A stretch of 64,000 nt of DNA, taken from positions 2,108,001 to 2,172,000 of the forward strand of contig NC_135261.1 in NCBI RefSeq assembly GCF_964204865.1, read 5' to 3'. Both the position numbers and the translations under genes were made by a program. Each line of letters starts with the position of its first letter. Position 1 is the stretch's first letter. Origin of the DNA: Styela clava. Taxonomy: Eukaryota. Below are positions 8,987-26,914 of the stretch, in pieces. The notes under the pieces are model-generated. The model was given only the letters and a program-made list of their open reading frames with translations, was not told the DNA's origin and made no database searches.

Positions 8987-9178
8987 ATAACATCTCAAAA
9001 CTCTTCTTAAATATTTCCGTAGACTTACAGGATTTCCTATATTGAAGGGTACATATAGAACTAACTACCTGTTTATTCTTCTGAGGAGCGAATCGAACCA
9101 AATTTCATGTAATACATTCTATGAAAAAACATGAAACATCCGCCAGGCAAACTTTCAAATTTAACATACAATGTCAAT

Positions 9179-9510
9179 GATAGGATTTACATTTTTATCC
9201 CGGAAGAGAGGAAAGCCGAAAAGACGGCGTAATCATATGGCGAACCACGGCCTCTCGTCCGGTTACCATTCCATGTCGAGTATGGGATTAGTTAGTTACT
9301 TGTTTTCGGAAGCATGGACTTGATGGTGGAGGAAGCCGTAACCAACCAGCGGTTACGTGAACCACCCAACGGCGGCTAGGAGTCCAGCAGTCCTCTCGCA
9401 CATAACTATCCCCGCATGAGATTTTAACCTGCGAACCCAAGCAGAGTAATCAGAGGTGTGGTGGCGAGCGTATTTCTAACGCTTAGCACGATGAGCCACA
9501 CCGCCGCGCC
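9179..9510 (-). mobile_element. tRNA-derived SINE, full length
   Basis: Minus-strand head GGCGCGGCGGTGTGGCTCA (A box); colinear with 16256-16601. Confidence 0.8.
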
Positions 9511-14939: not shown

Positions 14940-16205
14940 TAGTACCACATGCACTTCTAGTTGGCCTGGCTCAACAATTTTTGCATATGTCAATCCTAAC
15001 CCCAGCCTGACTACATCACCAGAAAAGTACGTCATTTCCACGTCACAGTGGCGTAATGAGGCTCACCAAAGTATGCGGATGGTCGTCCAAAGCGCGCAGA
15101 CGATCACCTGAAATCTAGCAAGCTATTTCTCTCGTTTTCTCGTCACTGGATCACGATAGGAAAGAGATCGCCGACTTCAGCGAGTTTGTTATCAGCGACG
15201 CAGATGCCATTTCGGGCTATCGTAATTTTTAATTTAGCAAGCCCTATGACGTGATGGTGACATAAATTTTGGATGTCATAGCCAGGTGGTTGGGGTTAGG
15301 TATAACTGGTCTCGTGTAGTTTCGTACCTAACGTACTTCTAGTAGGCGTAGCATAACAATTTTTTGATATGTCAATCGTAACCCCCATCTGACTACGCCA
15401 TCCAAAAATTATGTCACTACGACATCACAATCACGTCATAGAGCTTGCCAAATATAAGTACGATCGCCCGGAAATGGCATCGGCGCCAACAATAAAGAAC
15501 TGACTAACGTCATCGATCTCTCTCCTATTGGGATCGTAGCGACTTTGGTAGCAACGAGAAAACGAGAGAAATAGCTGTTCGATTCAAGTGCAGTTTTAAG
15601 TATTCTGTGGCGTCTGCAGCTGCCTCAAAACCATGGCGGTATTTCCATACCATGGCCGCTATGGCCAAACCTATGGCAACTGATTTTTTAGCTGCCACAA
15701 ACCAATGACGAGCTGCCGTTAGCGCGGCAGCAAATTCAAAACCAATGGCAGGTAAAATTTTGCTGCCGTAACCACGGCAGGTGGGCCGTAACGACAGGGC
15801 TGTCCCTTATGATGACAAATATTGGGTAAGTTTTTCTTATGGATACAGTTTTGATGGATTTGGGGTTAGGGTTAGGGTTTAAGTAGATATAATTCCGCAT
15901 GATCAATTGAAATCTGGTACATTATTTTGTGATTATACCGTAATACTGATACGTTAACTGAATAGCGCTATAAAACCATGGCTGCCACGGTTCATTCGTG
16001 GCAAGAGCTGCCATGAAGTGGTAAAAACTGAGCCTCGTTCGATTTTTCGTACCGGTATAGTTTGAGGGCTCTATTACGTCACTGTGACGTCGTAGTGACG
16101 TAATTTTTGGATGGCGTAGTCAGGTGGGGGTTAGGAATGACACGTGAAACAATTGTCATGCTACGCCCACTCGAAGTATGTTAGGTACCGGTACGAAACT
16201 ACATA
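14940..16205. repeat. Cluster of adjacent and nested inverted-repeat elements (foldback-like) upstream of ARMC1
   Basis: 15122-15143 gctatttctctcgttttctcgt is inverted to 15554-15576; 14947-15060 is inverted to 16068-16185; internal ccatggc-rich segment. Confidence 0.65.
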
Positions 16206-16255
16206 GGTAGGCTACCAGTACGGGGTAGGTACGGTACGGTACCGGCACAGAAATA

Positions 16256-16601
16256 GGATAGGATTTACATATTTATCCCGGGGGAGAGGAAAGCCGATAA
16301 GACAGCTCATCTATATGGTGAACCACGGCCTCTCGTCCAGTTACCGGTACCATTCCAAGTCGGGTACCGGTATGGGTTTAGTTATATTGTTTGTTTTCGG
16401 AAGCATGGACTTGACGGTGGAGGAAGCCGTAACCGACCAGCGGTTACGTGAACCACCCAACGACGGTGAGGAGTCCAGCAATCCTCTCGCACATAACCAT
16501 CCCTGCATGAGATTCGAACCTGCGAACCCACGCAGAGTAATTAGAGGTGCGGTGGATAGCGTATTGCTAACGCTTAGTCCTTTGAGCCACACCGCCGCGC
16601 C
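16256..16601 (-). mobile_element. tRNA-derived SINE, full length, with TSD
   Basis: A box TGGCTCAAAGG and B box GGTTCGAATC on the minus strand; TSD GAAATA at 16250-16255 and 16602-16607; empty site visible at ~38518 in the duplicated block. Confidence 0.88.
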
Positions 16602-17189
16602 GAAATATGAAAATCCTGACCTACCGGTATGCTACCAGGTAGCGTGGCCTATTTATTTTTCTCTCCCGTAATGATGGATAAATTATAGACACTTTAGGCT
16701 AAATATTTTGATATCAAATTAATCTAAGCTGGCATTCCATTTTAAACTTTTCCGTGGCAGAAAAATTTGACAACACGCAAAGCGAACAGACAGCATAATG
16801 AGCATAAGCTAAAAGCCCAAAGTGGTGAAATGCGAATTCTGGTTGTGTCATTTGCGCGAACAAACTTTGTAGTTTTGCGAGAACTTTGGGCGCGGAGTAT
16901 TTGTGTAAACCGTAAATATTTGTGGTCAGCAATTTTTGCAGGAATGCATTAACCTATATGAGAAATCATTTTAAAAATGTATATTAAAGATAATAATCCT
17001 TTATGCAAATAGATTTTCGCAAGAACGAAATTTTACGATTATAAAATTCAATGGAAAACCTTCTGGGAGAAGACCTTACTATCTGTTAGTTGGGGCTTAT
17101 CTTGTGCTGGATATTTTTGAGGTTAGGCGCCAGACCTTTTACATTTCAGAACAGTGAGATTGAAACTACTGCCGTTGAAAAAAAGCGAG

Positions 17190-20801: not shown

Positions 20802-21391
20802 TGTGGCTGCAGGCATTCGATCCCTTCCTTAGTCTGTTGATGGAATGCTAGCAGACGAATCTAATAACAATTCAATGCAGCGTGACTCGTGTTTCAATAT
20901 TTTAATAGCATGAAAATCCAGCTTCCACAGGACAAAGTCCAGAAATAATGCAGTAATGTCATCAAACATGAAATATTGTGTTCCGGTTAAATGCTAATTG
21001 ATAATTATAATGTTGAAACTGCGGTAACTGACATTGAATTCGGTGCTTCTCTGGCAGATTATTATAACAAACTGTGTAAACAAGAACATAACAATTAATT
21101 ACCTCTTTGTCAAAACAATATGCAACTGAACTCAATACCAGTACCGGTACATATCCTAAGCTCATATTTATACATGCAGATTCAAACAACAAAATTTGAC
21201 ACTAGAATAATATTAATATAGCCATACACGTCTGAACTATACAAGGACAGCACTAACTCGTGTTACAGGCCAGAGACAGGAAATGACATGTTTTCCAGAA
21301 CATTCTAACTAAACGAAAAATTCTAACTATGACGTCATACAATCTCGCCTGTCAATCATTAAAGACACTGCTGCAAACCGCTGCAGTAACA
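20802..21391 (-). repeat. LTR 1 (3' LTR)
   Basis: TGTGGCTGCAG...CTGCAGTAACA, 590 bp. Confidence 0.93.
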
Positions 21392-26324: not shown

Positions 26325-26914
26325 TGTGGCTGCAGGCATTTGATCCCTTCCTTAGTCTGTTGATGGAATGCTAGCAGACGAATCTAATAACAATTCAATG
26401 CAGCTTGACTCGTGTTTCAATATTTTAATAGCATGAAAATCCAGCTTCCACAGGACAAAGTCCAGAAATAATGCAGTAATGTCATCAAACATGAAATATT
26501 GTGTTCCGGTTAAATGCTAATTGATAATTATAATGTTGAAACTGCGGTAACTGACATTGAATTCGGTGCTTCTCTGGCAGATTATTATAACAAACTGTGT
26601 AAACAAGAACATAACAATTAATTACCTTTTTGTCAAAACAATATGCAACTGAACTCAATACCAGTACCGGTACATATCCTAAGCTCATATTTATACATGC
26701 AGATTCAAACAACAAAATTTGACACTAGAATAATATTAATATAGCCATACACGTCTGAACTATACAAGGACAGCACTAACTCGTGTTACAGGCCAGAGAC
26801 AGGAAATGACATGTTTTCCAGAACATTCTAACTAAACGAAAAATTCTAACTATGACGTCATACAATCTCGCCTGTCAATCATTAAAGACACTGCTGCAAA
26901 CCGCTGCAGTAACA
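26325..26914 (-). repeat. LTR 2 (shared middle LTR)
   Basis: 590 bp, flanked by internal sequence on both sides. Confidence 0.93.

What the first reader, a model, noticed from the sequence alone, without database searches (positions are those of the whole stretch)
16040..16640. Recurrent TA -> TA-CCGG-TA micro-insertions: a local scar-writing process
Seen by comparing paralogs: gtTAccattcc (9262, 2730) vs gtTACCGGTAccattcc (16340); gTAtggg (9280) vs gTACCGGTAtggg (16364); ccTAtgc (38536) vs ccTACCGGTAtgc (16620); gTAtag (38096) vs gTACCGGTAtag (16049); taggTAcgaaac (inverted TIR partner, ~15320) vs taggTACCGGTAcgaaac (16182 and 38224). The same 6-bp gain recurs at independent TA sites. One is shared by both duplicated blocks, while two lie inside a SINE that is absent from the duplicate, so the process ran before and after the duplication. 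Established: Tc1/mariner-superfamily elements duplicate TA and leave a few terminal bases on excision. Inference: footprints of a pogo/Tc2-like element with CCG..CGG ends hopping locally at very high frequency, or an undescribed templated-insertion mechanism. No donor element is visible in the window.
Basis: partly seen in the sequence, partly recalled or inferred. Interest (0 to 1): 0.75.

Follow-up and report, generated by a model that had tools for sequence, protein, structure and literature searches.

The report
Pogo transposon excision scars (TA-CCGG-TA)
The repeated six-letter gains at TA sites are most likely scars left when pogo-type jumping genes, whose ends begin CCG, cut themselves out; the mechanism is ordinary, but the genome holds tens of thousands of such scars.

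Summary
TACCGGTA occurs 18 times in the window against 0.15 expected, and 30,656 times in the 377-Mb genome against 4,861 for the reversed control word. Paralogue comparisons show TA -> TA-CCGG-TA gains at 16186, 16342, 16365 and 16622. At 16050 the gain comes with a 25-bp loss.

Thirty-nine other copies of the SINE, plus raw reads, show that the short form is the family consensus. The inserts are therefore derived.

Three pogo-type families (DDE_1 transposase, TA duplications, 24-26-bp inverted ends) all begin TA|CCGTA and end TACGG|TA. Joining the CCG and CGG stubs through their CG overlap gives TA-CCGG-TA. The predicted +5 form TACGGTA is also seen.

Scars carry G before and C after in 40% of cases, against about 18-23% background. 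This matches family B insertion sites (7 of 11 G, 9 of 11 C). Scars cluster and stack.

No occupied-versus-scar pair was found, so excision is inferred rather than observed. This is a known mechanism with new members, at a notable scale. Other first readers noted the motif elsewhere in this genome.

The parts
16050..16057 (.). TA-CCGG-TA scar with a flanking loss of about 25 bp relative to the 38-kb duplicate
16186..16193 (.). TA-CCGG-TA scar inside one arm of a 133-nt inverted repeat. The other arm (15324-15456, with flank 15315-15328) has plain TA. The scar is shared with 38228-38235, so it is older than the block duplication.
16230..16247 (.). Degenerate stack TA-CGG-TA-CGG-TA-CCGG, the counterpart of the larger stack at 38413-38512
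16256..16601 (-). SINE-like repeat (at least 2,982 first-look candidates in the genome), absent from the 38-kb duplicate, carrying two scars
16342..16349 (.). TA-CCGG-TA scar in the SINE (alignment site 119). It is absent from the family consensus: 37 of 42 aligned copies have no insertion at this site.
16365..16372 (.). TA-CCGG-TA scar in the SINE (alignment site 140). It is absent from the family consensus: 38 of 42 aligned copies have no insertion at this site.
16622..16629 (.). TA-CCGG-TA scar, absent from the 38-kb duplicate (ccTAtgc at 38536) and present in contigs of runs X3, X4 and X5
38228..38257 (.). Two scars: 38228 (= 16186) and 38250. The 16-kb copy has plain TA at the second site.
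38332..38344 (.). Stacked scars TA-CCGG-TA-CCG-TA
   Evidence: the following letters are not a repeat-family end
38413..38512 (.). Pile of scar units built from TA plus CCGG, CCG or CGG; 8 such complete units were parsed in this stretch
38499..38509 (.). GTTTTACGG|TA: nine letters identical to the outer end of the family B inverted repeat, followed by TA. Possibly a longer remnant.
21142..21149 (.). TACCGGTA carried inside a repeated LTR-type unit, also at 26665, 32095, 48854 and 54482. One event or native sequence, copied with the repeat.

Best explanation
The TA -> TA-CCGG-TA gains are excision footprints of cut-and-paste pogo-superfamily transposons resident in this genome, whose inverted ends begin 5'-CCGTA.

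Shown here:
- These elements insert at TA and duplicate it.
- Their first three letters are CCG and their last three are CGG.
- The scars are derived states at TA sites.
- The scars come in the forms +6 (CCGG+TA) and +5 (CCG or CGG+TA), and sometimes with flanking loss.
- Scar sites favour G-TA-C, as do family B insertion sites.

Inferred:
- On excision the transposase cuts the non-transferred strands 2-3 nt inside the element, as recalled for Tc1/Tc3 and Mos1/Sleeping Beauty, leaving CCG stubs as 3' overhangs on both flanks.
- End joining pairs the self-complementary terminal CG of the two stubs and fills one base on each side, giving TA-CCGG-TA.
- Pairing in full register, with a central mismatch, gives TA-CCG-TA or TA-CGG-TA.
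- Each scar turns one TA into two, each with half of the preferred G-TA-C context. Repeated insertion and excision in favoured regions then builds stacks.

Which family made most of the scars is not settled. Family B-like elements fit the flank preference best.
For: Enrichment:
- 18 matches in the window against 0.15 expected.
- 30,656 in the genome against 4,861 for the reversed word.
- TACCGGTA is the top TA-N4-TA octamer, 21 times an order-2 expectation, in a 312-kb sample that includes the window. Outside the window there are 25 in 248 kb, or 101 per Mb.

Polarity:
- The SINE consensus from 42 aligned copies lacks both inserts.
- The same two sites carry +6 in L054 (site 119) and in L045 and L048 (site 140), and +5 TACGG in L059.
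- Raw reads show 6-bp omissions at 16342 (124 of 861) and 16363 (152 of 482), and a loose-end consensus without the insert.

Signs of break repair:
- A 25-bp flanking loss at 16050.

Donors:
- 126 DDE_1 matches in the genome, against 2 DDE_3 and 3 mariner matches.
- Family B: 11 copies with TA|CCGTAAA(A/G)CGGGG ends; the four copies compared (L022-L025) are 99.97-100% identical.
- Family H: 89 ends, TA on both sides in 10 of 10, and many different internal-deletion lengths.
- TIRs are 24-26 bp, and 35 residues separate the second and third catalytic D in all three families.

Flanks:
- G at -1 in 12,361 of 30,656 scars and C at +1 in 12,241 of 30,656 (40% each); both in 5,245.
- Background is 18% at all TA sites in the sample and 23% for the control word.
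- Family B has G in 7 of 11 and C in 9 of 11.
- A fish Passer (pogo) element integrates at TA in AAGTACTT and leaves 0-4 bp footprints (PMC9976928, passages read).

Clustering:
- 14 of 99 neighbour gaps on contig C1 are at most 100 bp, against 0.75 expected.
- 1,090 in-phase doubles against a control of 5.
- A second stack on another chromosome (L130) has four TA sites within 100 bp, each with two units.
Against: - No excision event was seen directly. I found no locus with an element in one copy or allele and TACCGGTA in another.
- The one series I could test came out negative. For the host repeat carrying a family C MITE, 40 copies were scored and 30 of the 30 checkable ones were still occupied; the other 10 were uncheckable.
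- Resident copies with exact ends are few, roughly 11 + 70 + 45, against about 26,000 excess scars. The model therefore needs long-lasting or frequent activity, or families I did not sample.
- Families C and H sit in A/T-rich flanks, unlike most scars.
- Family B's further preference for T at +2 (8 of 11) is not evident among the scars I could read.
- The length of the cleavage stagger for these transposases is assumed from other Tc1/mariner elements (recalled).
- In-phase arrays could also grow by replication slippage.
- No excess of scars was found next to 18 present MITE copies: 1 in 10.9 kb against about 0.9 expected.
Confidence: 0.8

Rival explanations
1. The scars are transposon footprints, but of CCG- or CC-ended elements other than families B, C and H. 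These could be an extinct family or an unsampled high-copy MITE family, possibly of another TA-duplicating superfamily.
For: I defined the ends of only about eight of the lineages behind the 126 DDE_1 matches. Donor copy numbers are low relative to scars. C and H flanks do not match scar flanks.
Against: Three independent resident families already have exactly the required ends, and family B shares the G-TA-C preference. A scan of 322 kb for other TA|CCG...CGG|TA inverted-end pairs found only B, C and H.
Confidence: 0.12
2. Stacks and in-phase arrays grow mainly by replication slippage of a 6-bp unit once a first TACCGGTA exists. This would make them a micro-satellite-like process rather than serial insertion and excision.
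For: There are 1,090 in-phase doubles, and triples appear in the same listing. About 6 of about 44 listed doubles on C1 extend to a third unit, a higher rate than single-to-double at 3.6%. L060 shows a plain 5-bp tandem duplication at a SINE site.
Against: Slippage cannot create the first unit at isolated TA sites in a SINE, an inverted repeat or unique DNA. Stacks mix +6 and +5 units and are interrupted by unrelated letters. Out-of-phase clustering within 100 bp is about as strong per TA as in-phase stacking.
Confidence: 0.05
3. A TA-directed break-and-repair process not tied to a mobile element, for example a domesticated pogo-derived nuclease or templated insertion by an error-prone polymerase, writes CCGG at TA sites.
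For: No occupied-to-scar transition was observed. Several long DDE_1 open frames (about 680-700 aa) showed no shared flanks between copies and may be host genes.
Against: The inserted letters equal the end letters of resident elements, and the +5 variants and flanking loss are what end joining of CCG stubs predicts. No template-independent reason for CCGG is known to me.
Confidence: 0.03
4. TACCGGTA is ancestral and the short forms are 6-bp deletions, or the inserts are assembly errors.
For: None beyond the TA..TA microhomology that could in principle mediate deletion.
Against: At site 119, 37 of 42 SINE copies lack any insertion; at site 140, 38 of 42 do. The read pile-up gives the short form as consensus. 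Contigs from other runs carry the 16622 insert. The word is 6.3 times its control genome-wide.
Confidence: 0.01

Closest known systems
Excision footprints of Tc1/mariner-type elements (Tc1, Sleeping Beauty TAC(A/T)GTA, Minos; recalled, not from a call)
   Same: A TA target is duplicated, a few terminal transposon letters are left between the two TAs, the products vary, and flanking deletions occur occasionally.
   Different: The retained letters are CCG/CGG. Their terminal CG is self-complementary, so one product (CCGG) dominates. The scars are fixed in the genome in about 26,000 excess copies and stack into arrays.
Passer family of the pogo superfamily (PMC7386202 and PMC9976928; passages read)
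   Same: [quoted passage not shown] Passer integrates at TA in AAGTACTT, is biased to gene 5' ends and leaves 0-4 bp footprints. Scars here favour G-TA-C.
   Different: No tree was built, so membership is by architecture only. Family C's own insertion flanks are A-TA-T. The family with the G-TA-C preference (B) has an HTH_psq DNA-binding motif and a split reading frame.
MITE / autonomous-element pairs with abortive gap repair
   Same: Families C and H consist mostly of short internally deleted copies with intact ends: about 450-550 bp for C, and about 420-1,830 bp in many different lengths for H.
   Different: Of 18 family C MITEs fetched, 11 sit in one and the same host repeat and were evidently copied with it rather than inserted independently.

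Membership tests
Tc1/mariner-pogo excision footprint | Sits at a TA that is single in the empty state and flanks the insert on both sides | tested here: met
   Empty paralogues or partners exist for 16186, 16342, 16365, 16622 and 38250
Tc1/mariner-pogo excision footprint | Inserted letters equal the terminal letters of a resident element's two ends | tested here: met
   Families B, C and H all start CCG and end CGG next to TA
Tc1/mariner-pogo excision footprint | The long form is derived, not ancestral | tested here: met
   The SINE consensus of 42 copies and the read pile-up both lack the inserts
Tc1/mariner-pogo excision footprint | Product heterogeneity typical of end joining (one letter more or fewer, flanking loss) | tested here: met
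   TACGG in L059, TACC in L075, a 25-bp loss at 16050, and mixed CCGG/CCG/CGG units
Tc1/mariner-pogo excision footprint | An occupied site and its scar seen at the same locus (alleles or paralogues) | tested here: inconclusive
   In the host repeat of the family C MITE, 40 copies were scored, 30 were checkable and all 30 were occupied. No scar and no empty copy was found. Reads could not resolve single loci.
Tc1/mariner-pogo excision footprint | Staggered cleavage 2-3 nt inside the element | not testable with these tools
   Biochemical property, assumed from recalled work on Tc1, Tc3, Mos1 and Sleeping Beauty
pogo superfamily (donor elements B, C, H) | DDE_1 transposase domain | tested here: met
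   PF03184 E-values of 5e-27 (C), 3e-20 (B) and 5e-32 (H)
pogo superfamily (donor elements B, C, H) | TA target-site duplication and short terminal inverted repeats | tested here: met
   TA on both sides in 11 of 11 B, 18 of 18 C and 10 of 10 H copies. TIRs are 24-26 bp.
Passer family (as defined in PMC7386202) | BrkDBD + HTH_Tnp_Tc5 DNA-binding motifs and DD35D spacing | tested here: met
   This holds for family C only. Family B has HTH_psq instead, so B is not filed as Passer. The family H copy examined is truncated at the N-terminus.
Passer family (as defined in PMC7386202) | Placement inside the Passer clade in a transposase tree | not tested
   No tree was built. The nearest database proteins are 58-63% identical, with the same three Pfam domains.

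The most novel reading that the evidence does not exclude
The scars are a self-reinforcing mutational process, not passive debris. Each excision doubles the local number of TA targets and gives each new TA half of the element's preferred G-TA-C context. Favoured spots, such as edges of tRNA arrays here and gene 5' ends according to other unverified notes on this genome, would then become reusable landing pads that accumulate CpG-containing ACCGGT palindromes. On this reading, pogo excision is a leading source of small insertions in this species' regulatory DNA, with scars outnumbering resident elements by about 200 to 1.
Probability: 0.3. Interest if true: 0.65.

Novelty: new member of a known kind. 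Interest (0 to 1): 0.45.

Why it matters
The mechanism is textbook, but three things are useful.

First, the scar word gives a genome-wide count of past cut-and-paste events. There are about 26,000 excess copies, roughly 0.09% of all TA sites, left by families that today number only about 130 copies with exact ends. That scale is rarely measurable.

Second, scars are datable markers. In this window they order the block duplication, the SINE insertion and later events.

Third, the scars cluster and stack, and each adds a CpG-bearing palindrome. They are therefore a distinct, recognisable class of small insertion that annotation and variant calling in this species should expect.

The 99.97-100% identity of the four family B copies compared suggests the process may still be running.

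Tried and rejected
- Tc1 (DDE_3) and mariner (Transposase_1) donors: only 2 and 3 matches in the genome. I did not examine their ends for CCG.
- Inverted-end scan of the window for TA|CC... elements: the only hits were tRNA-Lys genes in opposite orientation and the 133-nt inverted repeat, whose arms start CCTAAC rather than CCG.
- Letters after the scar at 38338, tested as a possible element end: 54 matches with up to 2 mismatches against 66 for the control, so this is not a repeat family.
- Other pogo families: D and a relative in L037 end TA|(TA)GTAGG; F ends TA|GGGGAGAG; E ends TGT(A/G)GGGGA. None matches CCGG. Their predicted scar words do not stand out in the 312-kb sample. TAGGCCTA, at 3.1 times expectation, is the only hint.
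- Scars near present family C MITEs as a test of local hopping: 1 in 10.9 kb, no excess.
- Occupied/empty/scar series in the MITE's host repeat: all checkable copies are occupied.
- Reads: the stretch is so repetitive (depths of hundreds to thousands) that heterozygosity at single scars could not be judged.
- Literature: searches for the word alone, the word with footprint and transposon terms, the three end sequences, and excision-footprint terms found no description of this scar or these ends. The one co-occurrence, PMC1978519, is a primer. Supplements and figures of the Passer papers, which may show end letters and footprint sequences, were not visible.
- Groups A and G of long DDE_1 frames shared no flanks between copies. 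I left them unclassified.
Full report
THE OBSERVATION

The window contains TACCGGTA 18 times against 0.15 expected from dinucleotide-preserving shuffles, and none of 100 shuffles reached 18. Five sites lie in the reported stretch (16050, 16186, 16342, 16365, 16622). Eight lie in 38228-38491. Five sit in copies of one LTR-type repeat and are a single inherited state.

- Two other copies of the SINE-like repeat (about 9170-9510 and 2660-2970) have plain TA where 16342 has TA-CCGG-TA. The copy at 9280 also has plain TA where 16365 has TA-CCGG-TA.
- The 38-kb duplicate of the block has plain TA at the counterpart of 16622, and shares the scar at 16186 = 38228.
- The opposite arm of a 133-nt inverted repeat has plain TA where 16186 has the scar.
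At 16050 the six letters replace about 25 bp that the 38-kb copy still has, so that event is a gain with a flanking loss.

GENOME SCALE

The window is C16:2108001-2172000 of a 377-Mb assembly. The word occurs 30,656 times, and its reversed control 4,861 times.

In a 312-kb sample (the window plus loci fetched around pogo genes) it is the most over-represented TA-N4-TA octamer, at 21 times an order-2 expectation. The next non-trivial words are at about 3 times. Outside the window the density is 25 in 248 kb. With 7.5% of positions being TA, the excess corresponds to roughly 0.09% of all TA sites.

The contexts I could read are mostly unrelated to one another. The excess is therefore not one repeat family carrying the word.

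POLARITY

A search with the SINE found at least 2,982 first-look candidates, and I fetched the 39 best-scoring other copies. This sample is biased towards copies resembling the query.

In the 42-row alignment the consensus lacks both inserts. There is no insertion in 37 of 42 copies at site 119 and in 38 of 42 at site 140. The same two sites nevertheless carry the identical +6 in L054 (site 119) and in L045 and L048 (site 140). Site 119 also shows a +5 TACGG in L059 and the four-letter variants TACC (L075) and TGGT (L049). L060 has a plain 5-bp tandem duplication.

At a base rate of 0.09% per TA, about three hits per site are expected among 3,000 copies. These recurrences therefore need no special hot spot.

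Raw Hi-C reads of the same species label show 6-bp omissions at 16342 (124 of 861) and 16363 (152 of 482). The consensus of loose read ends at 16345 continues as the insert-free SINE. The long form is therefore derived.

Contigs from runs X3, X4 and X5 cross 16622 without gaps. These runs come from one study and may include the assembled animal.

DONORS

The genome has 126 matches to the pogo transposase domain DDE_1, against 2 to DDE_3 and 3 to the mariner domain. I fetched 20 loci and defined ends by comparing copies. Three families end TA|CCGTA...TACGG|TA.

- Family B is 2,938 bp long. It has 11 copies in the genome, three of them internally deleted, and the four copies compared (L022-L025) are 99.97-100% identical to each other. 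Its ends are CCGTAAA(A/G)CGGGGTGACT. It has HTH_psq and DDE_1 in two overlapping frames that look like two exons.
- Family C is 2.2-2.3 kb, with an intact 440-aa frame carrying BrkDBD, HTH_Tnp_Tc5 and DDE_1. It has 143 exact ends in the genome, mostly belonging to MITEs of about 450-550 bp.
- Family H has a 1,828-bp copy and a 708-bp copy among my loci, and 89 exact ends in the genome. These are paired at many different distances, the pattern expected from repeated abortive gap repair.

TA flanks both ends in 11 of 11 B, 18 of 18 C and 10 of 10 H copies examined. The inverted ends are 24-26 bp. In all three families, 35 residues separate the second and third catalytic aspartates as I assigned them by motif.

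Other pogo families in the sample end differently (GTAGG..., GGGGAGAG...).

HOW THE SCAR ARISES (INFERENCE)

In Tc1/mariner elements the non-transferred strands are cut 2-3 nt inside the element, so the flanks keep short 3' overhangs made of transposon end letters. This is recalled knowledge. The only paper evidence I read is that a fish Passer element leaves footprints of 0-4 bp, similar to Sleeping Beauty (PMC9976928, passage).

With ends CCG...CGG, both overhangs read 5'-CCG-3'. Their terminal CG dinucleotides are self-complementary. Pairing them and filling one base on each side gives TA-CCGG-TA. Full-register pairing leaves a central C/C mismatch and resolves to TA-CCG-TA or TA-CGG-TA. 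A 2-nt stagger with blunt joining gives CCGG as well.

The observed spectrum fits end joining of such stubs: a dominant +6, +5 variants at the same SINE site and inside stacks, and a flanking loss at 16050.

WHICH FAMILY

Genome-wide, G precedes the scar in 12,361 of 30,656 cases and C follows it in 12,241. Both occur in 5,245. The background is 18% at all TA sites in my sample and 23% next to the control word.

Family B insertion sites have G before in 7 of 11 and C after in 9 of 11, often as AG-TA-CT. This resembles the AAGTACTT target reported for Passer in human cells (PMC9976928, passage).

Families C and H sit in A/T-rich flanks. B-like elements are therefore the better candidates for most scars.

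In the window, 38499-38509 reads GTTTTACGG|TA, nine letters identical to the B end.

Against a simple match, T at +2, common at B sites, is not evident among the scars I could read. In addition, B has only 11 copies.

CLUSTERING

Among the first 100 sites on contig C1, 14 of 99 neighbour gaps are at most 100 bp, against 0.75 expected. Five gaps are exactly 6 bp. The in-phase double TACCGGTACCGGTA occurs 1,090 times, against a control of 5.

The window's stretch 38413-38512 is largely built from TA plus CCGG, CCG or CGG. A stack on another chromosome (L130) has four TA sites within 100 bp, each with two units.

Per TA, the excess in phase and the excess within 100 bp are of similar size, roughly 20-fold. 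Serial visits to favoured regions can therefore explain stacks. Slippage may add units but cannot start them.

Each scar supplies two TAs with half of the G-TA-C context, and a double supplies a full one. This would favour re-use, but it is my inference. Both window clusters lie about 550 bp from a tRNA-Lys gene at the edge of a tRNA array. Other first readers' notes on this genome place similar stacks at gene 5' ends; I did not test that.

WHAT IS MISSING

I found no locus where an element and its scar can be compared. Of 18 family C MITEs fetched, 11 lie in the same host repeat. Of 40 scored copies of that repeat:
- 23 abut an exact end listed;
- 6 have the far end at MITE distance;
- 1 that I fetched has an end with a one-letter deletion;
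- 10 lie on contigs not shown in the listing.

Thus 30 of the 30 checkable copies are occupied. There is no excess of scars beside present MITEs. The read data could not resolve alleles. Excision is therefore inferred from anatomy and not observed.

COMPARISON AND NOVELTY

This works like, and by the tests above is, a set of Tc1/mariner-pogo excision footprints.

Family C meets the published architectural definition of Passer: BrkDBD + HTH_Tnp_Tc5, DD35D, TA duplications and short ends (PMC7386202, passages). I built no tree. Family B is a pogo element that I leave unclassified.

My searches found no description of this scar word or of these ends. Figures and supplements that might show Passer end letters were not available.

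I rate it a new member of a known kind. The mechanism is ordinary. The scale (about 26,000 excess scars against about 130 resident copies with exact ends) and the stacking are the noteworthy parts.

Noticed in passing
G000:C6:21823670-21841296 (L095, L096, L109): Family B forms a head-to-tail tandem array: six DDE_1 matches spaced 2,937 bp apart. The internal junction reads ...GTTTTACG|CCGTAAAGC..., with the two ends abutted, no TA between them and one letter missing. This looks like a joined-ends (circle-type) junction that was amplified or reintegrated.
   Followed up: partly
L077-L094; G000 matches: Most family C MITEs (11 of 18 fetched) sit at the same place in one host repeat (flanks ...attaatattagt TA / TA ttaaccacatgatg...). 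That repeat has about 68 first-look candidates, and every checkable copy carries the MITE. The MITE spread as a passenger of a larger repeat.
   Followed up: partly
window 15324-15456 and 16056-16188 (also 14942-15057; 37334-38229 in the duplicate): There are 133-nt inverted-repeat arms, 84% complementary and 599 nt apart, bounded by TA with arms starting CCTAAC. The flanks outside the arms are also inverted, so this is part of a larger palindromic repeat of unknown kind.
   Followed up: no
window 17189-63999: An array of 21 tRNA genes (Lys-TTT, Asn-GTT, one Glu-TTC) in both orientations. The duplicated blocks carrying the scar clusters lie at array edges, about 550 bp from a tRNA-Lys gene.
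   Followed up: no
window 16256 and L130 (G000:C1:1482160): In two unrelated loci the same end of the SINE (ggataggattta...) abuts a scar stack within about 20-30 bp. This could be coincidence or a shared preference for the same regions.
   Followed up: no
window 15860-15880: A short TTAGGG-like run (ggggttagggttagggtt) lies inside the duplicated block. The 38-kb copy begins just after it in my alignment.
   Followed up: no
SINE alignment column 160 (L045, L047, L048, L054, L059, L063, L065, L066, L068, L069, L071, L072): A SINE subfamily is marked by a TTTTA-type five-letter insertion. All three other copies with a +6 scar (L045, L048, L054) and the +5 copy (L059) belong to it, so some scars could have been inherited from a source copy rather than made independently.
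   Followed up: no
G000 loci L018-L021, L036 (long DDE_1 frames of about 620-700 aa): Several long, intact DDE_1 open frames share no flanking similarity between copies. They may be host genes derived from pogo transposases rather than mobile copies.
   Followed up: no
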